A DNA stretch of 64,000 nt from Octopus bimaculoides (Eukaryota): the NCBI RefSeq assembly GCF_001194135.2, contig NC_068998.1, positions 2,058,321 through 2,122,320 on the forward strand, written 5' to 3'. The notes beneath the pieces were generated by a model that saw only the letters and a list, made by a program, of their open reading frames with translations, was not told the origin of the DNA and made no database searches. A program made the position numbers and the translations under genes. Below are positions 9,808 through 26,665 of this stretch, one piece after another; the first letter of the stretch is position 1; each line of letters opens with the position of its first letter.

Positions 9808-10198
9808 TATTGTGTTGAGTCAAAAGTTTTGCAATATTTTGGTAACTTATTTGCTTCATTCTTCAAGTTACAACAAAAGCATCCAAGCATCCAACAGTAG
9901 AGGCCGTCATGTGGTCAGTGTCTGAAGCCACTTTTGTGTCAGTTCTTTGATCCCATGCTGATACCATTTCTTATTCTTCAAGGTGAAGAACTCTTTCACT
10001 GAAACTTCTACCTAAAAGTCTTAGAAGTCCTATATCTCCGTGGATGAGGCAACAGTAACCAATTCCTTGGAGATAGTTACAGCAGGGTGCAACCGGAGGG
10101 CCTCTATTCAAAGGAATGCTTGGCTGTTTTTGGTGTCATTTGACAAATAAAGAAAATTAGTTACCAAAATATTGCAAAACCTTTCACTCAACTCAATA
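9808..10198. mobile_element. MITE-like element with ~58-bp inverted ends
   Basis: 9808-9866 is an imperfect reverse complement of 10140-10198, with a shared core gttttgcaatattttggtaact. Confidence 0.5.
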
Positions 10199-11690
10199 TT
10201 GTTTTGTTAATGTAATTTTTGGTTTTTGGAGATATTTTTGAAATAAAAATGGTGAGCTGAGATAATTTAAAGGGGAACACGAATACAAAAGAGAAATCTT
10301 CCTTAAAGGACGAAGTGGAAAATCCATGAGAAGTAGTGGGAGAGGGGGAAGGATTGTAGGAGAGAAAGGGATGTCTGGTGAAAAGGTAGGACAAAGAATA
10401 TCCAGAGAGAATATTCTGGAAAGCTAATGGTTTCCAATAATTTTTCTCTCAGACCATCTTGGCTGGAATCAAATGCGACAGTTTTGAAAATTTAGTTGTT
10501 TGCCCATTTTTGTTGGAGCAAAAAAAGACAGGTACTCTTTTCTTTTTTTTTAATTATTATTGTTAAGTGTTTCATAATGAGGTAAGAGTGGAACCAGTTT
10601 GTCAGCCAAGCAGCCAGGGTGAATGAAACAGTCATGGCTTGTCACATACATTACAGTAACAGCCATACACAGATTTGAACCCTTGGTCAGCTGTACTAGT
10701 GTTAAATGCTTTAAAACAAGTGAGGAGCTCTTTCTTTCTCTCTCTTCACACATCATTCCTACAAGGGCTGGCAATCATGGACCTAACCTTTATGCCAATA
10801 CCTGAAAATTCTTTGATTTTTCTTTGGCTAGATACAATAATGGTTTTCCATTGCCTTCTGTTGTTTTATTTACACTTAACTCTGCTAGTCTCTTGTTCTT
10901 TTGAGCTTACCCATGAGGCATAGGGTGTGTTTAATCCTCACAGAGGGAGACAGGTTCATGTAGCAAAGGACATGTTTAACCTTCATGTAGGGAGACAGGT
11001 TCGTGTGGCATAGGGCATGTTTTACACACATGTGGGCCTGCATTAAACATCAAACATGCCGAGGGACAAGTTCTTTTCTGAATTCTGAATGCCTTAGGTA
11101 CAAGACTGTCTTCTGCTATTTAACTTGTACTGGGACCCTTGAGAGCTATTACCACCCTGGGACCAGAGTAGTGTTGACTAAGGAATAACTCACTGCTTCC
11201 CAAAACTCCTGAACTCCTAAGCTGGAGCGTCATCATCAGATGCAGTTTAAAGTCTTATCCAATGTTGGACAAATGGATTAAATACTTGAATTGCTGTACC
11301 TCATCTCAATATCAACTTCAAACTGCACCAAGATCGGCTTTTATGTTCTATTTCTCTAGTTGTCAATATAAATACCTGTAATATAATGGGGTTGAGTTTA
11401 ATTAAATACCATCTGTTGCTCTTTAGAAAATCTTTGCATATGTTTCATCCAACTGGTTTCTTATCAAAGACAAACAGAACCCTGTTTAAGTTCAGGAATG
11501 GAAAGAAGGAGCTGGGGGACCCTTTTGCTGTAAGAAACAACAAACACGTCTTTGAGATTTAAGGATTCTCCTTAAAAGACATTTAGATTTCCTTTATTAT
11601 TTTCAAACATATATTATTACATTTATTGGTAAACAAAAACCACATTGAGTTAAAGGAGGTCTACAAGGAACCAATCAACGGTTCACTGTG

Positions 11691-11725
<35 letters not shown>

Positions 11726-12089
11726 TGTTTGATATTAGTGTGTATGTGTTGGTGTGTATATTTACACACAGGTATCTAATCTGCTACTTAAAGACTAAAG
11801 TCTAAGTGGGATGTTATTTTAAGGTTAAAAAGTGAGTTTAGATAAATTTAGCAAAACCCACTGAAATATATAAAAATATTATCTTTCAAAGAAGAACATG
11901 AAAAAGGTTGAGGTAATCTCTTGGTGGAGTAAGTTATCGGTTGGGTTTCGACTGGAGAATCTAGGGGGCAGCACTTCATTGATGTCATTGAGAAATCAAT
12001 GAATGTCATACAATCCCATTAGCTTACTCCACACAGTTTTCCTTTCTTATTCACTTTTAATTTTGTTGTTTGCATATTTCCAATGAAAT

Positions 12090-12380
12090 CCATGGCCTTT
12101 GTTTCAATTAATTTTGAAAATAATAATGAATTTAGTAAAATAATTGTCATTTTTAACTTGGTGTTTAGAACATAACAACATGAAACTTTGATGGAAGGTT
12201 TTAATTTTAGATCACTTTAAATCTTTTGTTACCATATTTCTAATAAAACACATGACTTTTCTTTCAATTAATTTTGAGAATAACACTGAATTTAGTAAAA
12301 TAATGTATTTATTACTCTTGCATTTGGAACATAAATTAGCATGAAATTTTATTGAAAGATTTTAATTTAGATCCGTTTAA
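12090..12380. repeat. Diverged tandem pair of an AT-rich dispersed repeat
   Basis: Two ~150-bp units (ttcaatt(t)aattttgaNaataa...gaatttagtaaaataat...aatttagatc). Related reverse-oriented copies at ~37325-37385, 58885-58945 and 59120-59180. Confidence 0.55.
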
Positions 12381-13269
12381 AATGGCAAGTTTGTGTCATA
12401 GAAGCTGCATCAATCTGAGATGGTATCAAAAGCATTGAAACATGTGACTGCATGTCTAATTCTTTTCATTAATACAGTAATTAGAAGCACTAAACAAAGT
12501 TCCTGGTAAACCAAATGTGTGATAGGGGTTCCATTCTTGATAACCACCATTTCACCTCACATTTTCTCATGTTTTTCTCTTAGAAATCTAAACATTTTTC
12601 TTGTCTAATAAGAATTTGTGAGTTCTACCAAAATTGTTGTCTTTGTTTTATTTCCTGATTTGAGTTATTTCACTTGAATTGCATCTTTAATTAATTAGGA
12701 AAAAGCATGAACAATACAACTTCCTGTTTTTCCTTTTTTAACACTTTATATGAAATGGTTATTTTTATTGACGGAGATGGTCGTTGAAATCGGCAGCTAT
12801 GAAATAAATTCTGTATTTAAGTTCCTAATCCTACCCAAATCAGCTTTTCTGTTCGTCACTGCTGGAATGAATTAATAAACTGTGGTACCAGTAAACTGTT
12901 GAGGTTGATTTAATCATGTTCTTATTCTATTTTTATACAGAATTGGTTTGAAAATAAGTTTCCAGTTAACTGGATCTCTAAGCAGATTCTGTCTGTACTT
13001 TGTTTCTTTTTTTTTTTTATCTTGTTTAGACTTTGAATACACACACACACATACAGCACAATGGTGAGACATATTTTCATGGCAGATTGCAAACAACACT
13101 GTCTGCATGATGGTAGCATTTGTTTGCAATTAGATCGTGATGACAAGACAAGGAGATACAAACACATATGGCAGGCATCTTTCAGATAAGAAAGTGATTT
13201 TAAAAATTGCTTTAAGAATTTTGCAAAAAAACAAAATTCTCTAATTTTATTCCCCCACTTCTCAATCAT

Positions 13270-13535
13270 CAAAAATAGATTACTCTCCCCAGTTGGGGAG
13301 ACTTTGTCTTGTCTTGCAAGTTATTTGGTGACCCCACAGGTGCTGGTGCTACAGAAAATGCACCCAGTCCACTCTGTAAAGAGCCTGGCATTAGGAAGGG
13401 CATCCAGCCCTGGAAACCTGGCCAAAACAAGACAGCTGGAGCCTGGTGCAGCTCTCTGGCATGCCACCTCCTATCAAACTGTCCAACCCATACCAGCATG
13501 GAAAACTGGTGTCAAATGATGATGATGATGATGAC
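13270..13535 (+). mobile_element. RTE-LINE 3'-end-derived repeat with (GAT)n tail
   Basis: ggcattaggaagggcatccagc...caacccataccagcatggaaaactggtgtcaaatgatgatgat. Same family at ~19240-19505 (+), 26740-26890 (+), 36985-37197 (+) and 63775-64000 (-). Linked to RTE through the 42682-43390 copy. Confidence 0.7.
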
Positions 13536-14115
13536 ACTGATATCACCAAAGTAACCAGACACCACTCATCGTATGTTGTATTTATGCAGACACTTAACGC
13601 GATGGCCAAACTGGATGCTTCTTAGGTGGCACTGACAGGTGTCTGATATATGTATGTCTAACCATTCCTCCATTGTCTGGGCTTCACTGGAAACAGGTGT
13701 TATTTTGTTTTAATTACTTTCAGTCTTTGTTTTTATGTTTTTATGAAATATTTATGAGGCTTTCTTAACATCTCTTAGGTTTATTTCAATTACAGCTGGT
13801 ATTTATCCTGTTGGAAAATGATTTACTGTTTCTTAAATAATCTTTATGAGACTTGCTGGACATTTTTGTTAGGAGACATTATTCCACACACACACACACA
13901 CACACACACACTAACATACAAACACACGCACTCTAACATACAAACATACAAAGACACACACAATCGTAATAATAATAATCATCATCAGTGGAGTTTGGGA
14001 ACAGCTATCCTTTGAACTCCCACACAACATGGAGAATGGAAAGAGGTTGAAGGAAAAATATGAAAAAGAAACTTTTGAAAAACCTCTTCTTTTTTTGCCA
14101 GAATCACAAACTCAT

Positions 14116-14153
<38 letters not shown>

Positions 14154-15232
14154 ACACACAAACATAGATAAGCACACATACACGCACACCAACACAGGTT
14201 GTCAAGTGGTGGTGGAAGGCAAGCACACAATATGTGCACTTGTCCCCCCAGAACAAATGGTGTGCTTAGCTGTGGTAACAACTGCGACGGCATTGCCATG
14301 GAGAATGGTCAGTGATGCTCACTGCAGCAGCCACTCAACTGGTTGATTTAAAAAAAAATTTTTATTAATGAATGAAGTCCCTTGACATGTTTGTTGTGCA
14401 GTGAGTTACATACACTCACTGTCTTATGTGTAGTGATTAGCCCACTGGAAACTTGTGACCAGTGAGATGTAAAATGCTTTTGTCATAGGTTGATATAGTC
14501 TTACCGTTCCATTTGACACACACTGACCGTCTTGGGATTGTGGTCCTTTGTTATGACTTCTCAACAACTCCCTGACTCTTTTCTTTCTTCCCCTTTCTCA
14601 CCTCTTCCACCACCTTCACTACCTTTTCAGTCCTTATACTACCTTTACTTTGCATGGTCTGGTTATATGTGCATATATTCTTTATTTGCGGGATTTACAA
14701 TGCTACTATTGATTCCATGCAGTAACATCACAATTATTCAAGCATTACAACACTTAAAAATGTTGATAATTCATCTCCATTTTTTGGTTAAGCTTTATCC
14801 AAAATGGAGACAGACTAACAACATTTCCAAATGGAATGCTTCGTAATTATGATATCGCATGAAACCAATGGTAGCATGGTAAATTGATTAATAAAGAATA
14901 TGTTTATCTGCCAGATGTGGTGTTCAGTACATATACTCACTGTTTGCAACTAATACCTGTGTGTGTATGCATGTGTGTGTGTGTGTTTATATGTATATAT
15001 ATATATATATATCCATTGCACCTCTTTCTCCTAGTACACTAGCCTTCCTTCTGTGACTCCCTCCTCTACTACTGGTTCTCTGCTTCTAACCATTGCACTT
15101 CTTACACAAACAAACGAATGACCACAACACCAACAATGGCTGCTATGCCATAACAGTATCGATTGCCGTCAGTTTTCAGTTACCTTCGAACTAAACACAT
15201 CTCTCTTCCTTCTATCAAAACATCTCCCTCTT

Positions 15233-15266
<34 letters not shown>

Positions 15267-15534
15267 GTTCATTGGCTTAAAACATATCTCTGTTGCTCTC
15301 TCTCTTCTCTTTCTGATTAAAACAAAACAAAATGCAGCTTCAACTCAATAAAAATGTCTAAATGTGTTTTTTTATTTTAAAAAAATGAAAAAACAATAAA
15401 TTTCAAAAAAATCAATAAAACTGTATATGTTGCTAAAGATGGAGTCTTTGGTTCTGTTTGTGCTGCTACATTTCAAAATGTGTGAAGAAGACTGCAGGTG
15501 AGCGGTACAGAATGAGAAATAAATGAAATAAATA

Positions 15535-15937
15535 GGCACAGGTGTGGATGTCTGGTAAGAAGCTTTCTTCCCAACCACATGGTTCTGGGTTCAGTTCCAC
15601 TGCATGGCACCTTGGGCAAGTGTCTTTTACTATAGCCACGGGCCGACCAAAGCCTTGTGAGTGGATTTGGTGGATGGAAACTGAAATAAAGCCCATCGTG
15701 TATATATAAATGTATATATCTATGTGTGTCTGTGTTTGTCCCACCACTTGACAACTGGTGTCAGTACCAGTGTATTTACGTCCCTTGTAACTTAGCAGTC
15801 TGGCAAAAGAGACTGATAGAATAAGTACTAGGCTTTAAAAAAATAAGTCCTGGGGTTGATTTGTTCAACTAAAACCCTTCATGGCAGTGCTCCAGCATGG
15901 CTGCAGTCAAATGACTGAAACTGGTAAATGAATAAAA
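15535..15937 (+). mobile_element. SINE family B (tRNA-like head, CA/TG microsatellite middle)
   Basis: gtgg...gtaagaagctttcttcccaaccacatggttctgggttcagttccactgcatggcaccttgggcaagtgtc...ccagcatggctgcagtcaaatgactgaaac. Further copies at ~20085-20290(-), 20690-21000(-), 33780-34070(-), 43412-43794(+), 45150-45310(-), 47410-47530(+), 54360-54505(-), 59400-59760(-), 62040-62405(-). Confidence 0.8.
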
Positions 15938-16285
15938 TATGTCTTGGCCAGGTATTGAAACCTTGTCTCTAACAAAGGAACATCTACCATTACTTGATCT
16001 GCTAGAAATGGCAGCCAAATTTTCATCAAATAACAGTTTACCATGTTAGAAAATATAAAAGTACTTTGAGGAAAAGAGAGTTACATTGGAAAATAAAGAG
16101 TTACATCTGAGTAAAAAAACGGGAGGGCCACATCTGGAATCTCCTTGATCATAGGCCAGCTGAACCTGGGTCAAACAGAAATGCAATTCGAAGAAGATGG
16201 CTTCACTGACAAGTATTTGGTTGTTTAACTCTTCAAACCTTCCATTACCATAGTTCTGTGGAAATTCAAAACAATATCAAGACAT

Positions 16286-16354
16286 GCATATGGTGTGGTG
16301 GTTAAAAGCACGGGTTACTAACCCCAAGATTCTGAGTTTGATTCCAAGCAGTGA

Positions 16355-16392
<38 letters not shown>

Positions 16393-16514
16393 TCGAAAAA
16401 TACCTTAGGAATGAGAACACAGGCTCGAAATTTCCCCAAGACACCTGATGAAGGCTGGAGGGTATATCAGCCGAAGCGTTGTGTTAACAACAAACAAGAT
16501 GAGGACAAATATCA
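16286..16514 (+). mobile_element. tRNA-headed element with (AAT)n linker and Penelope-like tail
   Basis: A-box TGGTGTGGTGG (16291-16301), B-box-like GTTTGATTCC (16336-16345), (AAT)n, then a tail that nearly matches 27258-27380 and includes a hammerhead-like motif. Confidence 0.7.
16440..16485 (+). ncRNA. Minimal type I hammerhead ribozyme motif, copy 1 (core variant)
   Basis: GACAC-CTGATGA-A-GGCTG[gagggtatat]CAGCC-GAAG-CG-TT-GTGTT. Stem I GACAC/GTGTT and stem II GGCTG/CAGCC are intact, but GAAA is changed to GAAG. Confidence 0.5.
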
Positions 16515-16519
16515 AGATG

Positions 16520-16740
16520 TGTGTTGGAGAGATGTGTGTTCGGAATGATGGCAGCAATCCTTACTGATGCCAACAAAGAAAGGGACATGGAAATGTTATT
16601 AAGAGAGGAGAATGCATGGGGAGAATCAACTTGCCCAAGATGACCCAACAAAAAGACCAACCAATGAAGTTGACATCAATGCAATCAAAAGCAGAAAGAC
16701 AAGGAGAGCAGCTGGGTTGTCAGGAATAGTTGGTGAGATG
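16520..16740 (+). mobile_element. Decayed RTE-type ORF2 fragment
   Basis: Translates to ...AIKSRKTRRAAGLSGIVGEM, resembling the pre-RT AIK.MK.GKA.GPSGI.AEM motif. Stops and frameshifts present. Confidence 0.55.
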
Positions 16741-16899
16741 TGCCCAGAAGTTTGCTTTCCAATGACAAGATTCTAGGTTCATATAGTTTGTAGTCTGTAT
16801 CACATTTTATGCTATAGATAGATAGACAGATAGATAGATACACATGCACTTGAAAGAGTAAACACACACATGCAAAACTCATATATACATATACATACA

Positions 16900-17362
16900 T
16901 AGTAACACCTTCATCAGTCAGACTCTGTTGTGTTGCATGCAATCTGTGGCATGGAGCTCCATCATGCTGAAAGATCTCACCTTCAACCAAGTCTGGTATC
17001 AAATTGTCCTTCAGCAGCTGGATGTATTTGGCACTATTCAAGTTACCATTAATTTTAAACGATTTTCTTGAACCATCACTTTTTATGCATCCCCAAAACA
17101 TCAGACTCTTACTCCCAAACTTCACTATTCTTGTCATGTAACGTGGGTCATTTCACTTTCTAATAAGTGAGAATTTGTCAGAAGGCCTTCAGGAAAGCAA
17201 AATAACTCCTACCACAAAATATAATGATTAGGTATGGAAATGACCCCAACAGGGCCAATGTTTCATCTGTAAAAAACACAATGCAAAACGTCTACTTATA
17301 AGTTGACAATTAGTAGAAATTTACAATAGTTTAAAGTAGCCAAAGAGTTTTGCATGGTACTG
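16900..17362 (-). mobile_element. Tc1-family transposon fragment (left end plus DDE region)
   Basis: VKFGSKSLMFWGCIKSDG...NLNSAKYIQLLKDNLIP...FQHDGAPCH. Tc1-like terminus TA-CAGTACCATGCAAAACTCTTTGG on the minus strand ends at 17362. Confidence 0.85.
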
Positions 17363-17452
17363 TATATATGTATATATCTGCATATATTTTTTTGTAATCT
17401 ATTAAATTACTGCATGCACAGTGGGATATTCCCATCATCATCAGTGTAAAGA

Positions 17453-17502
<50 letters not shown>

Positions 17503-17595
17503 ATTGTCTAAAATACATTTGTGGCCTTCACTAGATACAGATTAGTTTTACAAGCAATAACATGGCATCACCAATCTCCTTTGTTCTTATCTTAG

Positions 17596-17616
17596 CAATC
17601 ATTCTCCAGTCTGAAG
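17596..17616 (+). CDS. 21-nt microexon E21a (xIILQSE)
   Basis: ctcctttgttcttatcttag|CAATCATTCTCCAGTCTGAAG|gtaagc. Confidence 0.6.
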
Positions 17617-19141
17617 GTAAGCTTTCTAAGGATTCTTCATGTCTTTAAACCCTTTAAAATACATATTTAATTATTGTTAACGTTACTGTAGTCGTTGCTG
17701 TTGTTGATGTTATCATTATTATTATTATCATTATTTTAGCATGCTGGGCAAAATGCTTAGTGGCACTTTGTCCATCTTTATGTTCTGGGTTCAAATCCCA
17801 CTGAGTTCAGTTTTACCTTTCATTCTTTCAGGGTCGATAAAATAAGTACCAGTCATATACTGGAGCTGATGTAATTGACTTACCCAGTCTCCCAAAATCG
17901 CTGGCCTTGTGCTAAAATTTGAAACCATTATTATTATTATTATTATTAGTAGTAGTAGTAGTAGTAGTAGTAATAGTAGTAAGGCAGCGAGATGGCAAAG
18001 TCGTTAGCACAATAGATGAAATGTTTAGCTGTATTTCGTCCGTTTTTGCATTCTGAGTTCAAATTCCACTGAGGTCGACTTTGCTTTTCATCCTTTCAGG
18101 GTCGATAAAGTAAGTACCAGTTGCATACTGGGTCGATCTAATTGACTGGCCCCTTCTCCAAAATTTTGGGCCTTGTGCCTAGAGTAGAAAGGATTATTGT
18201 TGTTGTTGTTGTGTTCCTAATCTTTGCACAAAGACCACAATTTAGGATAGAGGGGTTAGCTACTTCGACTGGCTGTCATGACTTGACTGGTTATTTGTTT
18301 GACCACAGAAAAGATAAAAGTCAAAATTGGTCTTGGCAAGAATTGAACTCAGAACATGTAAAGATCCAGAAAAAATTCCCCACGGTACTTTTTCTGCAAA
18401 AATCATGATTCTGTCAAATTCTTACCATTATTCAGAACATTATTGCTGCCTCAAAGACAGGTCTTTAGACTTGCTTCTACCACTTACTGGCTTCTTTTAG
18501 AAATATTTTTTGTTTTCATGACTCAATGAGAAGACAAAGGGTAGCAACCACCTATGACTCGTTTGGAGTAAAGGGGAGATCTCTGAGGTTGGTGGGAAGG
18601 GGTGGAGGGAGAAGATTATCTTCAGATTATAGACCTGACCTGAAGACGTCACTGGGGGTAGTGTTAAAGCAGATGTTAAATTACCACCACCACCACCACC
18701 ACCACTGCTACTATCACCACCTTTATCAATGATGATGATGATGATGACAATGACATTCCATTTCATTTGTTTTTGTTGTATTTTTCAGGGGACAAAATTC
18801 CCATTCCTAAATGTAAGTATTCCATCACTTTCTAAAAGATAACCATTTCCCCGTCAACAGACCCTTCTAGAATTCCCTGCTTCTCAAAACTCACCAACAC
18901 CACTCCTGGCATACCTCCACACCCTTTCCTCATTATGACTCTTTTAATTTTCTATCTTTCACTTGTTTCAGTCATTAGACCATTAACCAGACAAAATGCA
19001 TTTCCTCTGTTGAAATTCTGCTGGGGTCAATAAATTAAGTACCAGTTATACACTGGGGTCAATGTAACTGACTAGTCCCCTCCACACAAATTTCAGGCCT
19101 TGTGTCTTAAGTAGAAAAGATTATTATTATTGTTATTATTA

Positions 19142-19196
<55 letters not shown>

Positions 19197-22100
19197 GGTA
19201 ATGAGTGCAGAATTGTCAGTATGCCGGGCAAAATGCTTAACGGCATTTTCTCTCTCTCCCAATTGAAGGGTCTTGTCCAGCAAGTTGCTTGGGGACCTAA
19301 CTGCAACTGGTGCCATGTAAAAAGCACCCAGTACATTCTGTAAAGTGGTTGCTATTAGGAAGGGCATCCAGCTGTAGAAACCCTGCCAGAGCAGACAATG
19401 GAGCTCAGCACCGTCCTCTGATCTTTCAATTCTAAGCAAAACTGTTCAACCCATGCCAGCATGGAAAAAGAGATGTTAAACGATGATGATGATGATGATG
19501 ATGACATTCCATTTCATTTGTCTTTCTTGTATTTTTCAGCGGACAAAATTCCCATTCCTAAATGTAAGTACTCCATCACTTTCTAAAAGATAACCATTTC
19601 CCCGTCAACAGACCCTTCTAGAATTCCCTGCTTCTCAAAACTCACCAACACCACTCCTGGCATACCTCCACACCCTTTCCTCGTTATGACTCTTTTAATT
19701 TTCTATCTTTTACTTGTTTCAGTCATTAGACTGTGGCCAGGCTGGGGCAGCACCACCTGGAACTATGAATTAACCCCACTATGTACACACACACACACAA
19801 TAAACTTCTTTCAGTTTCCATTTATGAAATCCATTCAGCATGGAAAAAGGGATGTTAAACGATGATGATGATGATGATGATGATGATGGTGACATTTCAT
19901 TTCATTTGTCTTTTTTTGTATTTTTCAGCGGACAAAATTCCTATGCATAAATGTAAGTACTCCTCAACAGATCCTTCTAGAATTCCTTGCTTCTCAAAAC
20001 TCACCAACACCACTCCCGGCATACCTCCACACCCTTTCCTCATTATGACTCTTTTAATTTTCTATCTTTTACTTCTTTCAGTCATTAGACTGCAGCCCAT
20101 GCTGGGGCAGCACCACCTGGAACTATGAATCAACCCCACTGTACACACACACACACACACACACAATAAACTTCTTTCAGTTTCTGCCTACCAAATCCAC
20201 TCACATAGCTTTGGTCAGCCTGAGGCTGTAGTAGAAAACACTTGCTCAAGGTGCCACCCAGTGGGACTGAACCCAGAACCAAGTGGTTGGGAATCATCAT
20301 CAGTGTAAAGACCACACACACACACACACACACACTTCACTAGATACAGATTAGTTTTACAAGCAAAAACATGGCATCACCAATCTCCTTTGTTCTTATT
20401 TTAGCAATCATTCTCCAGTCTGAAGGTAAGCTTTCTAAGCATTCCTCATGTCTTTAAAAGAGATGTTAAATGATGATGATGATGACAATGACATTCCATT
20501 TTATTGTATTTTTCAGGGGACAATATTCCCATTCCTAAATGTAAGTATTCCATTACTTTCTAAAGGACTACCATTTCCCCGTCAACAGATCCTTCTAGAA
20601 TTCCTTGCTTCTCAAAACTCACCAACACCACTCCTGGCATACCTCCACACCCTTTCTTTGTTATGACTCTTTTAATTTTTTATCTTTTACTTGTTTCAGT
20701 CATTAGACTGCAGCCCCACTATTTATTTGCTTTTTTAAGCCTGGCACCTATTCCATTAGTCCCTTTTGCCAAACTGCTAAGTTACAGGGAGGTACACACA
20801 CTAACACCAGTTGCTAAATGATCTTCGGGGACAAACACACACATAACAAACTTCTTTCAGTTTCTGTGTACGAAATCCACTCACATGGCTTTGGTCAGCT
20901 TGAGGCTATAGCAGAAAACACTTGCTGAAGGTGCCACACAATGGGACTGAGCCCAGAACCATGTGGTTGGGAAGCCAGCTTCTTACCACACAGCTATGCC
21001 TGATCATAATACTATTACCTTCCTGCCTGATGATGATGATGTAATTAGCTGCAGGGGAAGATGCGTCAGTGAAAATAGAGAGAAATCAGATTCATTTCAA
21101 ACTTCTTTGCAGTATGGTTGTGCTTGATGAGTACAAAGCTGATGTTAAATATCAACTTCAGGAACATTCTGGAAAATATTGATCAAACACACAAACAAGA
21201 AATGGTAATCATACAATGTTTATTCTTCTCAAATTGTTTTTACTCTTTTGTCAGTGTTACAGTTCATGTGCTTCTCATGATCTTGCAGGAGTATCAACAA
21301 AATAATGGTATAAATTCTTATCAGAATATTCCGTTTTTCCCAGGCCTATACCAACATAAAAGTGCAAGCATGTATGTGTGCCTGGGCTAAATAAAATATT
21401 CTTTCTGGTTTAATTTGAAGAATTAATTTATAGGGAAAATTTAAAAAAAAAAAAAAAAGCGTAAGAATTAACTGGTTTCAACCTGTTATTTCCTCCTGGT
21501 TGTATTTTAGTCTGAAGCTATGTGGGTGGTGGGAGATTCTTCAACAACAGCAATGGAAAGCTTGTTTTCCAATTTGGATAATTTCTGTTAGTGACATATA
21601 TCGGTCAAATAACAGGTAATAATACTGTAAATTGAATTTTAGATCTTATGAAGTTTACAGTCAATTTAAAACAACATCAGATACCTTGATATTGTACCTT
21701 TGTGGCCTTTTTTTTTCTGATTTAGTTTTTACAGGGCTTCACTTTATTATCCTCTAAAAGACTGTAAATCAAGCGTATATTTCCATAACTTTAAATCATT
21801 CCACTGCAAATGATATTTCATTTTTTATCATCTTGTCTAAAATTATTAAAAAAATAGGAATAAAGGTATCATTTCCAGCTTCTATGTCTAGTTTAGCTGC
21901 TATGTCCATCTCATCTATACCTGTAATTACATCGGGTTCTCTCTTTTAAAGGTTTGTACTCCATCCTTATCAAGTCATAAGCTTTCTGCAGAAGTGTTTG
22001 AGATTTACGTCGTTGAAGACGGTTATTCCTTGCAATGTTTTCTTGTTCCATGGCAACTTTTGCCTGTAATTTCTTCTTATTTTGGTCAGATTGGTAAAAA

Positions 22101-25100
22101 TTTTCAGCATCACACTCACTGGAGTCTCTTTCATCACTCACATCAGACAAGTCAGCGTAATCAATTGGTTTCATACATACCGTACAAGTATTGTGGATAT
22201 CATAGTAACAATCCAGACAATACACAGCCTTACAACTTTCATTCTCACAATGTTTGAAGTTCACTCTGTCACTAATTTTACCATCTGCACTGCATCCTAA
22301 ACAATATTTGATTTCAAACCCCAGTATCTCAAGTAATCGCCTAACTGGAGGACATCTTGCCGCTAGTTTACCTTTCCAGCTGATGTTTTTTGCATCCATA
22401 GAACTTCGATAATCAAGACGCATTTTCCGCCGTAGAAACTTTTCCAGACTTCCCCGTTGTACCAAGAGATTAGAATAGAGCCATACTGCTCTTTCTTTGG
22501 CACGAACTGGATAAAATTCATCACAGACAATATGGCGTAGTCGTCGCCCGTAGCCTTCAAAAACGACTGATATTAGGCACAAGCCCATAATCATGCCGAT
22601 GGTTTTGTATACTTCGTAATTGGGTTCAGTTGGATTAGGGAGACAAAGAGTAAGGTTTTTCACATCGTTGGTTGCCAAGGGACCAAAAATGGATATCAGA
22701 GATTTATACATGTCTGCATACGGCCCATTACCACTAACATGTACTTGGACATGTGACAGTTCTTCGACGTCAACTTTCATTGAAAAACTCTTGCGCACTA
22801 GTTCCAGGATCCAGAAAAGGCCATAATCACAAAATAAATGAAAAAGTATGGTGGAAGAAGTAATTAAAAAGAAAACAAAGCCTTTACAGAATTTTCGTTT
22901 CTCTTGACAAGTTAGCCTTAACGAAGTGGAACTAATATAGTTTTGTTTCTCAGATCTCTTTAATGGAAGTAGTGTCTCTTTCGACTGCATCCCTTTAATG
23001 TAGTCAATATCATATAAATTTTTCGAAAGGTAGATATTATCAAATTTATCTTTACTCAGGTATTTAATTCTATAACGATAAGCTTTTACAAACACAATAA
23101 TTAGCATTAAGTCTGTGACAAATTTGATGAATTCCAATTTTGTAAAATACATGCTCAGTTTTTCTTTGACTTCACGGAGCACATCTCTTTTCACTTGACT
23201 GTAACTTTTCGTCTGTTCCATAGACACTTGGTATTCGTAATCGATTTTTATTTTAAAGTAGAACATGTCATATAAATTCTGAATTGCCTTGCTAACTGGA
23301 GCGGCAAACGTTCGAAGCACAAGCTTCTTGAGTACTTCAGTAAGAGAACATAACATTTCGCCAATTCTTGCTAAGTGACATATACTTTTAAAAAAGGTTA
23401 CAATATTGCACAATTTCACAAATTCGGGTAGCACCGTCCTAACACAATTAATACGAGCCAATCTAAAAGCCCTCGTGCATTTTCTAAAGGGGTCGAGCAT
23501 CCTTTCATTGCAAACATTCACTATGTTGCCAAGCCAAGAAAAGATATTATTTATTGACGCAATTAGTTCTTCGATTCCTTTCTTCATTGACAGAAATGCT
23601 TGCTGTGCCATACGACTGTAGCGATTGATTGTATTCACAAAATCTTCAATCCCACCGATAATCCCAGATAAAGGATTTAAAGCGATGGCTATAAGTCTCT
23701 CTGTTTGATTGTAGGCAACTTCTTGACCGCAGGTCATTGCCTCAGTCATCACGACAATGTTGTTACTAAAATTGGCCACTGGTTGATTAAGAGTGAGCAT
23801 GAAAGCATACAGAATTAGAAACGATCGACCTTTGCTTGTGAAAAACCCCGGGGCAGCCAAAAGGATCGTACAGCGAACTGCCACCGAGTATGGTAAAACT
23901 AAACAAAGCACAAAACCAGCGAAAAAACAAATTATGATCGCTGTCCATAAGGTCGTTTCAACATGATAGATTAACACCAAATAAAGAAAAAGATTAACCA
24001 TAGAACCAAACAGGAACCATAACGACAACGAGCAGAACTGTTGATAGTAGCTACCTGGTTTTAAGTCCTCTTTTTTACGGATACAACATTCTTCATGTAA
24101 CTTCACAGCTCTTCTCTTTGCCTTGGCAAGACGACGTAATGATATTTTCAGCTGAATGGCTTTCAGCGTTTTTTGCACAAACATCATATTCCAAGAATAA
24201 TCAGATATCAGTTTTAATCAACAGTAACTTGTAGATCATTACACACAGCCTGGAGCCCTCCATGGAAAATAAGGATCAAAGGAACATGGATGTTATTCAA
24301 TGAATTTGAGAAGCTTTTTGAAATGGGAATTGCATTGCCATTCTTTCTTTTATTTTTACCTGTTTAATGGCAAATTCACGGCAAGAACTGAAACATTTTT
24401 TAACGTTGTTCTTCTTACGATTATCTGTGTTGGTTTGCTTCTTGTTAATCCCAATATTTCGACACTGCTTCTGTTGGTTTTGTATTCCTGTTAAGTTTTC
24501 TTGCAAGCAAGGTTTTGAAAGGAATCGAAACAACGGAATAGTTCTACAATTTGTACAGACACGTATGGCTAAATAATTAATAACCTATAAAACAATGGAT
24601 TGAATAAGACAAATCGAACTATTGAGGCAAATTATTGATTTCAGGCAACGCTTGAACGAAGAACAAATCTTAACGGAAGTTACGTGACATGACGTCAAAG
24701 ATGGCTTCTGGCCACCAACGACATTTCTTTCATTTTCTCTTCTTTAAGAACAAAACAGAAATTAAAATCTCACGTACTCGTTTCACATTTTATATCATGG
24801 ATTCATTTAAGAATTAATTTAACATGTTTATTTTCCATTAATAGTACAGGTTATTGATTATGTGCTGTTAAACGCAATGGAACCATGATCCAGAAATGGG
24901 AGACTGATGCCTTTCAGATGAAGTCAAGCTTTTTATTTTACAATTTGTCTTAAAAATTGTTATACGTATGACTGGATTACAACATCAGTATTTTCTTTAC
25001 TGAAAATAGAGAAGAAAAATGTGTGGAAATCGTCATCAACTCAATTTAATAATTAGAATTAGAATTAGCTGGCAGAATCGTTAGCACGCCGGGCGAAATG

Positions 25101-26357
25101 TATTTCGTCTGCCGTTACGTTCTGAGTTCAAATTCCGCCGAGGTCGACTTTGCCTTTCATCCTTTCGGGGTCGATTAAATAAGTACCATTTACGCACTGG
25201 GGTCGATGTAATCTACTTAATCTCTTTGTCTGTCCCCTCTATGTTTAGCCCCCTGTGGGCAATAAAGAAATAAATATTATAATTAGACTCTATAACAAAA
25301 GCATGATCGCCCGATCATGTAATCAGTATGCGTGCGCGAAACGACCGAAAGTTGTGGCGTACTAGTATCGAAAGATCGCCTTATATTTAATTAGCAACAC
25401 CTGATTTTTAAAATTAGTTTTATGTCATAATAATTATAAAAAAATTATTTTAGACAAACCAAGGCAATCATTAGCTGTAACCCCAATGTATCCCCTTGTT
25501 GTTGTAGTGGTAACGACTTGACACTTGTAGACGATGTTTCTAGTGAGGTAGATTCTGTTTAAAGGGCAGTTGGGTGTTTTGCTACAGTTATATGTTTTGA
25601 TCATAGGAATCCTCCATTATTAGAGTTGGATTTGTCAGTGCTCCAGCATGGTCGCAGTCAAATGACTGAAACAAATGAAAGGATACTATTTTCTTCACTC
25701 CTACTCCCCTCCACTCACTACTCCCCCTACTTCCACTCCACTACTATCAGCCCCCCCCCTCCCCCCTGTTCTGTCTCTGGCTGACATTGAAACTTTTGAA
25801 TTTCTCTTCTTGCAGCAATCCAACCTAAACTCAAATGTCCGAAAAACAAACCCAAAGTCAAGTACTGTCTGATGAACCCATGTACCATAGGACCACACAG
25901 TTTTTGCCCATTATATCCCGTTGCTACTTGTTAGTAAGTATAAACAACCAGCTTCATATTCTCTTTAATGAGTTGTTCCTTATTCACCCNNNNNNNNNNN
26001 NNNNNNNNNNNNNNNNNNNNNNNNNNNNNNNNNNNNNNNNNNNNNNNNNNNNNNNNNNNNNNNNNNNNNNNNNNNNNNNNNNNNNNNNNNNNNNNNNNNN
26101 NNNNNNNNNNNNNNNNNNNNNNNNNNNNNNNNNNNNNNNNNNNNNNNNNNNNNNNNNNNNNNNNNNNNNNNNNNNNNNNNNNNNNNNNNNNNNNNNNNNN
26201 NNNNNNNNNNNNNNNNNNNNNNNNNNNNNNNNNNNNNNNNNNNNNNNNNNNNNNNNNNNNNNNNNNNNNNNNNNNNNNNNNNNNNNNNNNNNNNNNNNNN
26301 NNNNNNNNNNNNNNNNNNNNNNNNNNNNNNNNNNNNNNNNNNNNNNNNNNNNNNNNN

Positions 26358-26389
<32 letters not shown>

Positions 26390-26403
26390 TACATACATAT
26401 ATA

Positions 26404-26441
<38 letters not shown>

Positions 26442-26557
26442 TATATGTAAGTGTGTGCATACATGCATTCCTTTATTGCAGTTCCTATTTATGTGGCGGC
26501 TGTTACTCAAAATGGTTCAACAGCAGAGGAAAAGAGGTGTTTTGCTCTCGGAGATAA
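17596..26557 (+). CDS. Putative microexon gene, 5'-partial: join(17596-17616,18789-18812,19540-19563,19929-19952,20405-20425,20517-20540,25816-25933,26482-26557); Ile/Pro/Lys-rich repeat linker plus C-terminal 8-Cys module
   Basis: All exons have a pyrimidine tract + YAG acceptor. All internal donors are GTAAGT or GTAAGC. Phase-1 splicing gives an open frame: IILQSEGDKIPIPKSDKIPIPKSDKIPMHKSIILQSEGDNIPIPKSIQPKLKCPKNKPKVKYCLMNPCTIGPHSFCPLYPVATCYSYLCGGCYSKWFNSRGKEVFCSRR*. The link across the 5.3-kb intron is inferred from phase only. Confidence 0.55.
18789..18812 (+). CDS. 24-nt microexon E24a (GDKIPIPK)
   Basis: ttgtatttttcag|GGGACAAAATTCCCATTCCTAAAT|gtaagt. Confidence 0.62.
19540..19563 (+). 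CDS. 24-nt microexon E24b (SDKIPIPK)
   Basis: ttgtatttttcag|CGGACAAAATTCCCATTCCTAAAT|gtaagt. Confidence 0.62.
19929..19952 (+). CDS. 24-nt microexon E24c (SDKIPMHK)
   Basis: ttgtatttttcag|CGGACAAAATTCCTATGCATAAAT|gtaagt. Confidence 0.62.
20405..20425 (+). CDS. 21-nt microexon E21b (SIILQSE)
   Basis: ctcctttgttcttattttag|CAATCATTCTCCAGTCTGAAG|gtaagc, identical to E21a. Confidence 0.6.
20517..20540 (+). CDS. 24-nt microexon E24d (GDNIPIPK)
   Basis: ttgtatttttcag|GGGACAATATTCCCATTCCTAAAT|gtaagt. The intron from E21b is only 91 nt. Confidence 0.62.
21113..21865 (+). other. Cluster of four candidate + strand exons (21113-21204, 21289-21371, 21511-21615, 21735-~21880)
   Basis: Short introns of 84, 139 and 119 nt with YAG acceptors and gtaatc/gtatgt/gtaata donors. 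The first three exons each have one open frame and these chain (phase 1-0-2-2). AATAAA at 21860-21865. The peptide resembles nothing I recognise. Confidence 0.35.
21911..24187 (-). CDS. DCST2: DC-STAMP domain-containing protein 2 (DCST2 / SPE-42 / Sneaky family), single-exon CDS, 758 aa
   Basis: N-terminal TM block with VRCTILLAAPGFFTSKGRSFL, MTCGQEVAYNQT, Cys-rich ectodomain, KDKFDNIYL...TLLPL, DYGLFWILELVR, RRLRHIVCDEFYPVRAKERAVWLYSNLL. The RING-like tail CLGC...CENESCKAVYCLDC...NTCTVC followed by an acidic DSSE is closer to DCST2 than DCST1 as I recall them. In-frame stop upstream of the ATG. Confidence 0.9.
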   Translation of the reverse strand: MMFVQKTLKAIQLKISLRRLAKAKRRAVKLHEECCIRKKEDLKPGSYYQQFCSLSLWFLFGSMVNLFLYLVLIYHVETTLWTAIIICFFAGFVLCLVLPYSVAVRCTILLAAPGFFTSKGRSFLILYAFMLTLNQPVANFSNNIVVMTEAMTCGQEVAYNQTERLIAIALNPLSGIIGGIEDFVNTINRYSRMAQQAFLSMKKGIEELIASINNIFSWLGNIVNVCNERMLDPFRKCTRAFRLARINCVRTVLPEFVKLCNIVTFFKSICHLARIGEMLCSLTEVLKKLVLRTFAAPVSKAIQNLYDMFYFKIKIDYEYQVSMEQTKSYSQVKRDVLREVKEKLSMYFTKLEFIKFVTDLMLIIVFVKAYRYRIKYLSKDKFDNIYLSKNLYDIDYIKGMQSKETLLPLKRSEKQNYISSTSLRLTCQEKRKFCKGFVFFLITSSTILFHLFCDYGLFWILELVRKSFSMKVDVEELSHVQVHVSGNGPYADMYKSLISIFGPLATNDVKNLTLCLPNPTEPNYEVYKTIGMIMGLCLISVVFEGYGRRLRHIVCDEFYPVRAKERAVWLYSNLLVQRGSLEKFLRRKMRLDYRSSMDAKNISWKGKLAARCPPVRRLLEILGFEIKYCLGCSADGKISDRVNFKHCENESCKAVYCLDCYYDIHNTCTVCMKPIDYADLSDVSDERDSSECDAENFYQSDQNKKKLQAKVAMEQENIARNNRLQRRKSQTLLQKAYDLIRMEYKPLKERTRCNYRYR
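24674..24705. promoter_or_regulatory. Dense motif cluster (ETS, CRE/ATF, YY1-like), likely DCST2 promoter region
   Basis: CGGAAGT (24674-80), TTACGTGA (24680-87), TGACGTCA (24690-97) and AAGATGGC (24698-705) within 32 bp, about 500 bp upstream of the DCST2 ATG, in otherwise CpG-poor DNA. Confidence 0.5.
25067..25271 (+). mobile_element. SINE family A (tRNA-related)
   Basis: agctggcagaatcgttagcacgccgggcgaaatg...ttctgagttcaaattccgccgaggtcgactttgcctttcatcc with B-box GTTCAAATTCC. Other copies at ~3620-3835(-), 17738-17930(+), 17980-18195(+), 28455-28660(+), 29390-29610(+), 49385-49610(-), 49610-49760(+), 53800-53960(-), 57200-57410(-), 57880-58075(-). Confidence 0.85.
25816..25933 (+). CDS. Exon encoding first part of an 8-Cys module (IQPKLKCPKNKPKVKYCLMNPCTIGPHSFCPLYPVATC)
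   Basis: tttctcttcttgcag| acceptor, TA|gtaagt donor, 118 nt, phase 1 to 2. Confidence 0.75.
26482..26557 (+). CDS. Terminal coding exon of the 8-Cys module (YSYLCGGCYSKWFNSRGKEVFCSRR*)
   Basis: cctttattgcag| acceptor. Phase 2 completes TAT and gives CGGC in the expected place. TAA at 26555-26557. Confidence 0.75.
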
Positions 26558-26659: not shown

Positions 26660-26665
26660 AATAAA
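26660..26665 (+). terminator. Candidate polyadenylation signal of the Cys-module gene
   Basis: AATAAA about 100 nt after the TAA at 26557. Confidence 0.5.

What the first reader, a model, noticed from the sequence alone, without database searches (positions are those of the whole stretch)
17596..26557. Hidden microexon gene: tandem array of symmetric 21/24-nt exons feeding a cysteine-rich domain (MEG-like architecture)
Seen: six tiny exons (21,24,24,24,21,24 nt), each a multiple of 3, each with a pyrimidine tract + YAG and GTAAGT/GTAAGC. Spliced in phase 1 they give xIILQSE-GDKIPIPK-SDKIPIPK-SDKIPMHK-SIILQSE-GDNIPIPK with no stop, then join in phase to the exon at 25816, which starts with the same CAATC as the 21-nt exons, and end in an 8-Cys module. 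Established: Schistosoma micro-exon genes use arrays of short symmetric exons and exon skipping to diversify secreted proteins. Inference: any subset of these exons keeps the frame, so the locus could make a secreted Cys-domain protein with a length-tunable Pro/Lys/Ile linker (up to 64 combinations). I do not know of this architecture being described in cephalopods. No ORF in the track shows it. Caveat: phase 0 is also open through the microexons, and the 5' exon is not fixed.
Basis: partly seen in the sequence, partly recalled or inferred. Interest (0 to 1): 0.88.

Follow-up and report, generated by a model that had tools for sequence, protein, structure and literature searches.

The report
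Octopus secreted-protein gene with 24-nt micro-exon array

Summary
The sequence observation holds, and the gene is real. The window is Octopus bimaculoides (CM046618.1), and the locus is RefSeq LOC128249893. My reconstruction from window exons matches both RefSeq isoforms exactly, which confirms five annotated junctions, including the one across the gap.

The gap (25990-26357) lies inside the last intron. It does not affect the reading frame, because the gap-free O. sinensis orthologue has the same two exons.

The main correction concerns the "21-nt exons". They are the 3' ends of the first coding exon (ATG 17562-17616, signal peptide MASPISFVLILAIILQSE) and of its internal duplicate (20371-20425). 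That leaves four true cassette exons, not six, so "64 combinations" is wrong.

O. sinensis has 16 intact 24-nt micro-exons and 9 exon-1 copies. Splice signals are invariant in all 20 micro-exon copies, and no copy has an indel. The exon interior varies about 2.5 times more than the adjacent intron.

The C-terminal 8-Cys module belongs to a metazoan-wide family with no match in Pfam, by sequence in the PDB, or by fold search against the PDB.

The architecture is MEG-like but not homologous to schistosome MEGs. Exon skipping and use of the internal first exons remain untested. Both O. bimaculoides RefSeq models lack the signal-peptide exon.

The parts
16902..17561 (+). Upstream region of the first exon-1 copy. 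It is orthologous to the O. sinensis upstream region and contains a (CA)n microsatellite and a TATA-like TAAAATA at 17509-17515, 53 nt before the ATG. This is the likely main promoter and 5'UTR.
   Evidence: It is 85.5% identical over 678 aligned columns (about 650 nt of each locus) to L001 9352-10000. Internal exon-1 copies share only about 72-110 nt of it. The TATA-like motif is kept in most copies. Promoter function is inferred, not shown.
17562..17616 (+). Coding exon 1 (E1a): ATG plus the signal peptide MASPISFVLILAIILQSE plus the first base of a split codon. It ends at donor GTAAGC with intron phase 1.
   Evidence: It matches the N-terminus of the O. sinensis RefSeq protein XP_036365701.1 (MASPISFLLILAIILQSE). 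The hydrophobic core scores 2.2-2.9 on the Kyte-Doolittle scale.
18789..18812 (+). Micro-exon m1, 24 nt, phase 1-1, encoding (G)DKIPIPK.
   Evidence: It is included in RefSeq isoform X2 (exact reconstruction).
19540..19563 (+). Micro-exon m2, 24 nt, encoding (S)DKIPIPK.
   Evidence: It is in RefSeq X1 and X2.
19929..19952 (+). Micro-exon m3, 24 nt, encoding (S)DKIPMHK.
   Evidence: It is in RefSeq X1 and X2.
20293..20458 (+). Internal duplicate of the exon-1 unit (E1b). The ATG is at 20371 and the coding part is 20371-20425, with an identical peptide and donor GTAAGC. The 27-nt segment holding the TATA-like motif is deleted.
   Evidence: Repeat families D8 and D10 are 97-100% identical to 17434-17649. 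Both RefSeq isoforms skip it.
20517..20540 (+). Micro-exon m4, 24 nt. It encodes (W)DNIPIPK after another micro-exon, or (G)DNIPIPK directly after exon 1. It is orthologous to the last O. sinensis micro-exon (DEVPIPK).
   Evidence: It is in RefSeq X1 and X2.
25816..25933 (+). Exon C1, 118 nt, encoding (S)IQPKLKCPKNKPKVKYCLMNPCTIGPHSFCPLYPVATC plus two bases of a Tyr codon. This is the first five Cys of the 8-Cys domain.
   Evidence: The O. sinensis orthologous exon is L001 49535-49652, the same length with the same splice sites.
25934..26481 (+). Last intron, containing the assembly gap 25990-26357. (TA)n repeats flank the gap.
   Evidence: The same gap is present in the public chromosome assembly.
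26482..26557 (+). Exon C2 coding part, encoding (Y)SYLCGGCYSKWFNSRGKEVFCSRR plus the stop. This is the last three Cys.
26660..26665 (+). AATAAA polyadenylation signal about 100 nt after the stop.
   Evidence: Read directly from the sequence. Its use is inferred.

Best explanation
The locus is one real gene: O. bimaculoides LOC128249893, orthologous to O. sinensis LOC118766410. It encodes a small secreted protein made of three parts.

(1) Exon 1 (17562-17616) encodes an 18-residue signal peptide and ends in intron phase 1.

(2) Four 24-nt phase 1-1 micro-exons (18789, 19540, 19929, 20517) each add one eight-residue unit, x-D-K-I-P-I-P-K. Together they form a Pro/Lys/Ile-rich spacer.

(3) Two terminal exons (25816-25933 and 26482-26557) encode one copy of a metazoan-wide 8-Cys domain.

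The predicted full product is 114 aa: MASPISFVLILAIILQSEGDKIPIPKSDKIPIPKSDKIPMHKWDNIPIPKSIQPKLKC...FCSRR.

The array changes by tandem duplication of roughly 0.25-kb micro-exon units. Each unit carries its own invariant splice signals. The duplications have also copied exon 1 with about 100 nt of its upstream flank into the array. This happened once in O. bimaculoides and eight times in O. sinensis. They have no upstream acceptor, and the annotated mRNAs pass over them.

Shown: exon positions, five annotated junctions, the orthologue's structure, the copy-number difference, the conservation pattern, and domain family membership.

Inferred: secretion and the cleavage site (after QSE-G/A). Also inferred is that the repeats act as a spacer whose length is free to vary between species, and possibly between transcripts, because any subset keeps the frame. 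A third inference is that micro-exon recognition depends on the conserved proximal intron sequence.
For: - Identity of the locus: the window is 100% identical to CM046618.1 of O. bimaculoides.
- A search with the spliced peptide returns only two proteins, XP_052830423.1 (O. bimaculoides) and XP_036365701.1 (O. sinensis).
- Concatenating window exons reproduces RefSeq X1 exactly. It also reproduces RefSeq X2 (XP_052830424.1) exactly. Together these give the junctions 18812>19540, 19563>19929, 19952>20517, 20540>25816 and 25933>26482.
- The O. sinensis protein starts MASPISFLLILAIILQSE-A-DKTPIHK, which shows that the "21-nt exon" is the end of the signal-peptide exon.
- O. sinensis has 16 of 16, and O. 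bimaculoides 4 of 4, unit-B copies that are intact: AG, 24 nt, GTAAGT, open in the gene's frame.
- The 13 nt before and 7 nt after the exon are invariant in all 20 copies. No alignment gap touches the exon or splice sites, although 141 of 319 alignment columns have gaps.
- The exon interior has 0.79 minimum mutations per site against 0.32 in the next 90 nt of intron (binomial p=0.003). There are 14 non-synonymous and 5 synonymous variants.
- The C-terminal domain has 100 HMMER hits at E<1e-3 and 285 domain copies with the pattern C-x8-C-x4-C-x4-C-x7-C-x4-C-x2-C-x12-14-C. The alignment runs across the C1/C2 junction without any indel at the junction.
- The AF2 model of the domain has pLDDT 89.
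- Only the first exon-1 copy has a long orthologous upstream region.
Against: - No RNA reads could be examined. The junction evidence comes from automated RefSeq (Gnomon) models, and I could not see what supports them.
- Neither O. bimaculoides model contains exon 1, so the junction 17616>18789 rests only on the orthologue and on frame logic.
- The collection held no transcript-derived protein of this gene from read assemblies.
- The O. sinensis model uses only 11 of 16 intact micro-exons. That could be real skipping or a modelling ambiguity among near-identical exons.
- The function of the protein and of its domain is unknown: no Pfam family, no PDB sequence match and no PDB fold match.
- Genome-wide copy number of the 250-nt unit could not be checked.
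Confidence: 0.82

Rival explanations
1. Six cassette micro-exons, including two 21-nt exons that use the acceptor ...cttatcttag|CAATC, can be combined freely (up to 64 isoforms) downstream of an unidentified 5' exon.
For: The sequence upstream of each 21-nt segment does look like a 3' splice site. Including the segment would keep the frame and add IILQSE. The motif is also present in all O. sinensis copies.
Against: That "acceptor" lies inside the codons for L-I-L-A of a signal peptide that starts at an ATG 34 nt upstream. No annotated product in either species contains an internal IILQSE, although 1 (O. bimaculoides) and 8 (O. sinensis) internal copies are passed over. Inclusion would put a hydrophobic signal-peptide core inside a hydrophilic spacer.
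Confidence: 0.06
2. Promoter-choice ruler. Each internal exon-1 copy is an active alternative first exon with its own core promoter. The chosen start site then sets how many repeats the secreted protein carries: 1 or 4 in O. bimaculoides, and 1 to 16 in O. sinensis.
For: All 11 exon-1 copies in the two species keep the ATG, the open frame and a GT donor. Most keep a TATA-like TAAAATA 53 nt upstream. The terminal G of exon 1 joined to GG, CG or CA always gives Gly or Ala, a suitable -1 residue for signal peptidase (the cleavage rule is from general knowledge).
Against: Internal copies share only about 72-110 nt upstream of the ATG with the first copy. The first copy has about 650 nt of orthologous upstream sequence. 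The copy next to the last micro-exon has lost the TATA-like motif in O. bimaculoides, and the motif is mutated there in O. sinensis. The copies are too young for their intactness to prove selection. No annotated model starts at an internal copy.
Confidence: 0.15
3. Passenger array. The gene makes essentially one product, and copy-number change is neutral slippage of a tolerant spacer. There is no regulated exon skipping and no diversifying role.
For: The ratio of non-synonymous to synonymous variants (14:5) is about what neutrality predicts. The distal intron is as variable as the exon. The repeats differ between species in a way typical of concerted evolution, DKIPIPK against DKTPIHK. The domain itself evolves quickly, with pN/pS 0.71.
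Against: All 20 copies keep the exact length, the frame and the splice signals, while the flanks are full of indels. The O. sinensis model omits 5 intact exons, which hints at skipping.
Confidence: 0.35
4. This is not a gene feature. The units are pieces of a dispersed repeat or an assembly artefact of a repetitive region.
For: The last 25-45 nt of the 250-nt unit and its (GAT)n tract match elsewhere in the window. The introns are full of SINE-like repeats, and the assembly has gaps.
Against: Full-length units occur only inside the array, across 64 kb of O. bimaculoides and 62 kb of O. sinensis sequence. The O. bimaculoides array region (window 9461-25989) is gap-free. An independent assembly of a second species shows the same design. 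The spliced product is a bona fide member of a conserved domain family.
Confidence: 0.03

Closest known systems
Schistosoma micro-exon genes (MEGs)
   Same: Both encode a secreted product with an N-terminal signal peptide. Both have a central coding region made of very short symmetric exons (multiples of 3) separated by much longer introns, so any subset keeps the frame. Both evolve quickly and arise by lineage-specific tandem expansion (definition from PMC4350168, and bioRxiv 10.1101/2023.06.21.545858).
   Different: There is no sequence homology. MEGs are reported as restricted to platyhelminths or Schistosomatidae. Here the micro-exons are near-identical copies of one 24-nt unit encoding a simple repeat, not a series of different exons. 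They make up only 28% of the CDS in O. bimaculoides and 51-61% in O. sinensis. The protein ends in a conserved, folded 8-Cys domain. Alternative splicing has not been demonstrated.
Variable-first-exon clusters (clustered protocadherins, UGT1A)
   Same: Several copies of a first exon, each with its own donor, lie in tandem upstream of shared downstream exons (general knowledge; structure).
   Different: The first-exon copies here encode the same signal peptide, so they carry no variable domain. They bring only about 100 nt of upstream sequence. Their use as start sites is untested.
Combinatorial mini-exon cassettes such as the 5' mini-exons of fast skeletal troponin T
   Same: A run of tiny in-frame cassette exons can tune the length and charge of an unstructured N-terminal segment (general knowledge).
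   Different: Those exons are ancient, differ from one another and are proven to be alternatively spliced. They are not a recently duplicated array, and the protein is intracellular.
Unnamed metazoan 8-Cys module (consensus CPPGKPxVxCxxDPCxxAxCPAYPDAxCVxNYCGGCNAxFxDxxGxxVxC)
   Same: The C-terminal 58 residues align along their full length. Seven of the eight Cys columns are invariant, together with the G of CGGC and the P of DPC. P-x-A is nearly invariant. The last Cys varies in position among members.
   Different: The octopus copies have a longer third loop (x8 instead of x4) and x5 instead of x4 before CGGC. The domain is single and follows a repeat spacer. Many relatives carry 3-12 tandem copies or combine the module with Kunitz, WAP, TIL or thyroglobulin-1 domains.

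Membership tests
Schistosome micro-exon gene (MEG) superfamily | Homology to, or taxonomic membership among, platyhelminth MEG families | tested here: not met
   A search with the spliced peptide found only the two octopus proteins. The relatives of the Cys domain whose source I checked are rotifer, nematomorph, echinoderm, amphioxus and sponge proteins. MEGs are described as restricted to platyhelminths or Schistosomatidae.
Schistosome micro-exon gene (MEG) superfamily | Most of the coding region is made of very small symmetric exons (multiples of 3) | tested here: inconclusive
   The four 24-nt phase 1-1 exons give 96 of 345 coding nt (28%) in O. bimaculoides. In O. sinensis the figure is 264 of 513 nt (51%) for the annotated mRNA, or 61% if all 16 exons are used. 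The criterion is met in one species and not in the other.
Schistosome micro-exon gene (MEG) superfamily | Short exons separated by long introns (0.1-5 kb) | tested here: met
   The introns measure 1172, 727, 365, 564, 5275 and at least 548 nt (coordinates).
Schistosome micro-exon gene (MEG) superfamily | N-terminal signal peptide and secreted product | tested here: met
   MASPISFVLILAIILQSE has an 11-residue hydrophobic core and small residues at -3 and -1 (S-E-G/A). No dedicated predictor was available, and secretion itself was not tested.
Schistosome micro-exon gene (MEG) superfamily | Protein variation generated by alternative splicing of the micro-exons | not testable with these tools
   No RNA reads were available. 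The only hint is that the O. sinensis RefSeq mRNA omits 5 of 16 intact micro-exons.
Metazoan 8-Cys CPPG...CGGCNA module (unnamed; absent from Pfam) | Eight Cys with spacing about C-x8-C-x4-C-x4-C-x7-C-x4-C-x2-C-x12-14-C, plus the conserved CP, DPC, P-x-A-x-C and CGGC motifs | tested here: met
   phmmer gives E values down to 2.7e-60, with 100 hits below 1e-3. Seven of the eight Cys columns, the G of CGGC and the P of DPC are invariant, and P-x-A is nearly invariant. The octopus spacing is x9, x4, x8, x7, x5, x2, x14, a loop-length variant.
Variable-first-exon gene cluster | Each first exon has its own functional promoter and encodes a distinct variable segment | tested here: not met
   The exon-1 copies encode the same peptide. 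Only about 72-110 nt of upstream sequence was duplicated with them. Promoter activity was not testable.

The most novel reading that the evidence does not exclude
Octopuses may have independently evolved a MEG-like diversification locus. A rapidly expanding array of frame-neutral 24-nt micro-exons is interspersed with copies of the signal-peptide exon. Exon skipping, start-site choice or both would then yield a ladder of secreted isoforms that differ only in spacer length (1 to 16 repeats). The array size would change quickly between species and possibly between individuals.
Probability: 0.22. Interest if true: 0.75.

Novelty: new variant of a known kind. Interest (0 to 1): 0.52.

Why it matters
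Micro-exon gene architecture is regarded as a platyhelminth peculiarity. Here is a clear, independently evolved example in a cephalopod, with a four-fold difference in array size between two Octopus species. It shows that tandem micro-exon arrays can arise elsewhere by duplication of a single exon-plus-intron unit.

It also offers a compact natural system for asking how 24-nt exons are recognised. The splice signals are invariant, the proximal intron is conserved and the exon interior is variable.

On the practical side, both O. bimaculoides RefSeq models of this gene lack the signal-peptide exon. One of them is a wrong-frame ORF, so the annotation can be corrected.

The C-terminal module is a widespread animal 8-Cys domain. 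It has no Pfam entry, no PDB sequence match and no PDB fold match.

Tried and rejected
- Pfam on the spliced peptide and the domain gave nothing real. Pfam on ten relatives found only their other domains: Kunitz, WAP, TIL, thyroglobulin-1 and Lustrin_cystein.
- NCBIfam gave nothing.
- A PDB sequence-profile search gave 0 hits at E<=10.
- Foldseek of the pLDDT-89 model against the PDB gave no match below E=2.5, with TM<=0.34.
- tblastn for further copies of the Cys domain or the micro-exon peptide elsewhere in the window found none.
- Literature searches for cephalopod or octopus micro-exon genes and for the gene's accessions found nothing relevant. A search for the SRA run of the closest non-octopus relative also found nothing.
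- I looked for transcript-derived proteins of this gene in read-assembly collections. None were present, so I ran no further search on candidate isoforms.
- My first exon-1 coordinates were 2 nt off. I corrected them.
- I rejected the dispersed-repeat reading because only the (GAT)n tract and the last 25-45 nt of the unit recur elsewhere.
- I also rejected the idea that the gap could break the frame.
- I considered but did not test the idea that the shared CAATC at the start of exon 25816 and of the 21-nt segments reflects common origin. Five bases are too few to test.
Full report
**Where the window comes from.** The window is 100% identical to Octopus bimaculoides chromosome record CM046618.1 (assembly GCA_001194135.2). 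Window position equals locus L002 position plus 9460. The gap at 25990-26357 is present in that public assembly too.

**Checking the observation.**
- All six short segments lie at the stated coordinates. Their lengths are 21, 24, 24, 24, 21 and 24 nt. Each is preceded by a pyrimidine tract plus YAG and followed by GTAAGT or GTAAGC.
- In the stated frame they read IILQSE-GDKIPIPK-SDKIPIPK-SDKIPMHK-SIILQSE-GDNIPIPK. They continue in frame into 25816-25933 and 26482-26557, ending ...CYSYLCGGCYSKWFNSRGKEVFCSRR* with eight Cys.
- Pattern searches allowing up to 3 mismatches find 4 copies of the 24-nt unit plus donor and 2 copies of the 21-nt unit plus donor. Both have 0.00 expected by chance.
- The copies are not independent. 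Each 24-nt exon sits in a duplicated unit of about 250 nt, and each 21-nt segment sits in a duplicated unit of about 165 nt.

**The gap.**
- It lies inside the last intron, 56 nt after the donor TA|GTAAGT (25934) and 124 nt before the acceptor (26481). Its unknown length therefore cannot change the reading frame.
- The gap-free O. sinensis locus has the same two exons (118 and 76 nt, identical splice positions) separated by a 2117-nt intron.
- The start and end of that intron align to the sequence on both sides of the gap, at 93% over 56 nt and 87% over 86 nt.
- The spliced product aligns with a conserved domain family with no indel at the junction. RefSeq isoform X1 uses this junction.
- (TA)n tracts on both sides probably explain why the assembly broke here.
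- The true intron length, and whether the gap hides anything optional, remain unknown.

**What the locus is.** A search of 5.8 billion proteins with the spliced peptide returned exactly two proteins. They are XP_052830423.1 (LOC128249893 isoform X1, O. bimaculoides, 114 aa) and XP_036365701.1 (LOC118766410, O. sinensis, 170 aa).

The O. sinensis protein reads MASPISFLLILAIILQSE-A-DKTPIHK-S-DKTPIHK..., with eleven 8-residue units, followed by ...SIKHKFKCPKDKPKVKYCLMNPC...FCSRR.

This settles the 5' end. In the window, an ATG at 17562 has the context AACATGG and an in-frame stop upstream. It opens MASPISFVLILAIILQSE and runs straight into the donor at 17617.

Its supposed acceptor, cttatcttag, is the coding sequence for L-I-L-A. 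The second "21-nt exon" is the same part of an internal duplicate of exon 1 (ATG 20371, 97-100% identical).

**Annotated junctions.**
- Concatenating window segments 19461-19563, 19929-19952, 20517-20540, 25816-25933 and 26482-26557 reproduces isoform X1 exactly.
- Concatenating 18729-18812, 19540-19563, 19929-19952 and 20517-20666 gives a 93-aa phase-0 ORF. An exact look-up shows it is XP_052830424.1, isoform X2 of the same gene.
- RefSeq therefore contains the junctions 18812>19540, 19563>19929, 19952>20517, 20540>25816 and 25933>26482.
- Both isoforms skip the internal exon-1 copy.
- Both O. bimaculoides models start at an ATG inside an intronic (GAT)n tract and lack the signal-peptide exon. 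X2 is also in the wrong frame with a retained intron. These 5' ends look like modelling artefacts, whereas the O. sinensis model has the proper start.
- The corrected O. bimaculoides product would be 114 aa, or 90 aa if only the last micro-exon is used.
- I could not see the RNA evidence behind these automated models.

**The orthologous array.**
- In O. sinensis (L001, no gaps) the gene spans 41.8 kb.
- It has 16 copies of the micro-exon unit. All are intact: tgtatttttcag, 24 nt, gtaagta, and open in the gene's frame.
- It has 9 copies of the exon-1 unit. All keep the ATG, the 18-codon frame and a GT donor.
- The order is A BBB A B A BBBB A B A BB A BB A B A B A B, followed by the two Cys-domain exons.
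- The annotated mRNA uses 11 of the 16 micro-exons and none of the 8 internal exon-1 copies.
- The repeat consensus is species-specific, DKTPIHK against DKIPIPK. Only the last micro-exon looks orthologous one to one (DEVPIPK and DNIPIPK). This points to independent expansion or concerted evolution.

**Conservation pattern** across the 20 copies:
- The 13 nt before the exon and the 7 nt after it are invariant.
- No alignment gap touches the exon or splice sites, although 141 of 319 alignment columns contain gaps.
- The exon interior needs at least 19 mutations in 24 sites (0.79 per site). The next 90 intron sites need 29 (0.32 per site; binomial p=0.003).
- Variable columns number 15 of 24 in the exon against 28 of 90 in the intron (Fisher p=0.008).
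- More distal intron is as variable as the exon, at 70-77% pairwise identity.
- The exon has 14 unique non-synonymous variants and 5 synonymous ones, close to the neutral expectation.

My reading is that length, frame, splice signals and roughly 100 nt of proximal intron are constrained, while the encoded residues are largely free. This is an inference. Conserved intron flanks are a known property of micro-exons in other animals (general knowledge).

**Internal exon-1 copies.** The first copy in each species has about 650 nt of orthologous upstream sequence (85.5% identity). Internal copies share only about 72-110 nt upstream of the ATG.

That short stretch contains a TATA-like TAAAATA 53 nt before the ATG. 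The motif is deleted in the O. bimaculoides internal copy and mutated in its O. sinensis counterpart.

The internal copies therefore look like passengers of the duplication process. Weak alternative-promoter activity cannot be excluded.

One point is compatible with modular use but may be coincidence. The terminal G of exon 1 gives Gly or Ala with every possible downstream partner (GG, CG or CA), and either suits the -1 position of a signal-peptidase site.

**The Cys-rich end.**
- HMMER against 1.84 billion representative proteins found 100 proteins at E<1e-3, 22 of them at E<1e-10.
- Together they hold 285 copies of a module with the pattern C-x8-C-x4-C-x4-C-x7-C-x4-C-x2-C-x12-14-C. The consensus is CPPGKPxVxCxxDPCxxAxCPAYPDAxCVxNYCGGCNAxFxDxxGxxVxC.
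- Hosts include rotifer proteins with 11 copies, a nematomorph protein, a sea-cucumber papilin with seven Kunitz domains, an amphioxus zonadhesin-like protein with WAP, TIL and thyroglobulin-1 domains, and sponge proteins.
- The module has no Pfam or NCBIfam model and no PDB relative by sequence.
- A confident AF2 model (pLDDT 89) has no PDB fold match.
- Its company suggests an extracellular module, possibly related to protease inhibitors. That is association only.
- Between the two octopuses the domain has pN 0.10 and pS 0.14 (ratio 0.71) with all Cys kept, so it evolves fast.

**Comparison with the known.**
- MEGs are defined by most of the coding region lying in very small symmetric exons, which allows alternative splicing to make pools of similar secreted proteins. 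They are said to be restricted to platyhelminths.
- The octopus gene shares the signal peptide, the symmetric micro-exons, the long introns and the rapid evolution.
- It differs in four ways. It is not homologous. Its micro-exons are copies of one repeat unit. They make up 28% of the CDS in O. bimaculoides and 51-61% in O. sinensis. Splicing variation is unproven.
- It therefore works like a MEG in architecture but is not a member of that family.
- I found no paper describing such a gene in cephalopods.

**Verdict.** The finding is real and worth keeping, with three qualifications. The gene is already in RefSeq as an uncharacterised locus. The 21-nt "exons" and the 64-isoform arithmetic are wrong. 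The diversification mechanism is still a hypothesis that needs RNA data.

Noticed in passing
window 21911-24187 (- strand); also L001 41703-43979 (-): An intronless 758-aa ORF lies on the opposite strand inside the 5.3-kb intron between the last micro-exon and the Cys-domain exons. Its precomputed Pfam hits are Dcst2, DC_STAMP and zf-RING_DCST1_C. The nesting is conserved in O. sinensis. DCST proteins act in gamete fusion in other animals (general knowledge). Whether host and nested gene share expression is unknown.
   Followed up: partly
window 18729-20666 and 19461-19563: Both RefSeq protein models of LOC128249893 start at ATGs inside intronic (GAT)n tracts and lack the signal-peptide exon. 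Isoform X2 (XP_052830424.1) is a phase-0 ORF through the micro-exons that ends in a retained intron. These are likely annotation artefacts.
   Followed up: yes
window 25816-26557 (protein domain); proteins P0003-P0100: The C-terminal 8-Cys module defines a widespread animal domain family (sponge to amphioxus), often in long tandem arrays or next to Kunitz, WAP or TIL domains. It has no Pfam model, no PDB sequence match and no PDB fold match, despite a confident AF2 model.
   Followed up: partly
window +37 to +96 downstream of each 24-nt exon (e.g. 18849-18908, 19600-19659, 20577-20636): A C/T-rich intron block of about 60 nt (...caacagacccttctagaattccctgcttctcaaaactcaccaac...) is 91-94% identical among all 20 unit copies of two species. 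That is more conserved than the exon itself, so it is a candidate intronic splicing element.
   Followed up: partly
window 17455-17499 and 20312-20334 ((CA)n); 18730-18747, 19483-19504, 19862-19888, 20473-20487 ((GAT)n): Every exon-1 copy is preceded by a (CA)n tract and every micro-exon by a (GAT)n tract of variable length. The same holds in O. sinensis. These microsatellites may favour unequal exchange within the array.
   Followed up: no
window 17736-17863, 18004-18131, 25073-25200; also 19015-19174: Copies of a SINE-like dispersed element (...ggttcaaatcccactgag...) fill the introns of the array. The last 25-45 nt of the micro-exon unit (...tgtttcagtcattagac) also recurs elsewhere in the window on the other strand, which suggests that the unit ends in a fragment of a dispersed repeat.
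   Followed up: partly
L003 (Logan contig SRR24189489_70020), protein P0120: The closest non-octopus single-domain relative is 48% identical and has the same long x8 third loop. It is a signal peptide followed by a short linker and the domain, with no 8-residue repeats. It comes from an unidentified sequencing run. If it is a mollusc, the repeat array would be an octopod addition.
   Followed up: partly
window 25928-25939: The donor of exon C1 is embedded in TGT TA|G TAA GT. An unspliced transcript would therefore stop immediately after the fifth Cys, giving a truncated 5-Cys product.
   Followed up: no
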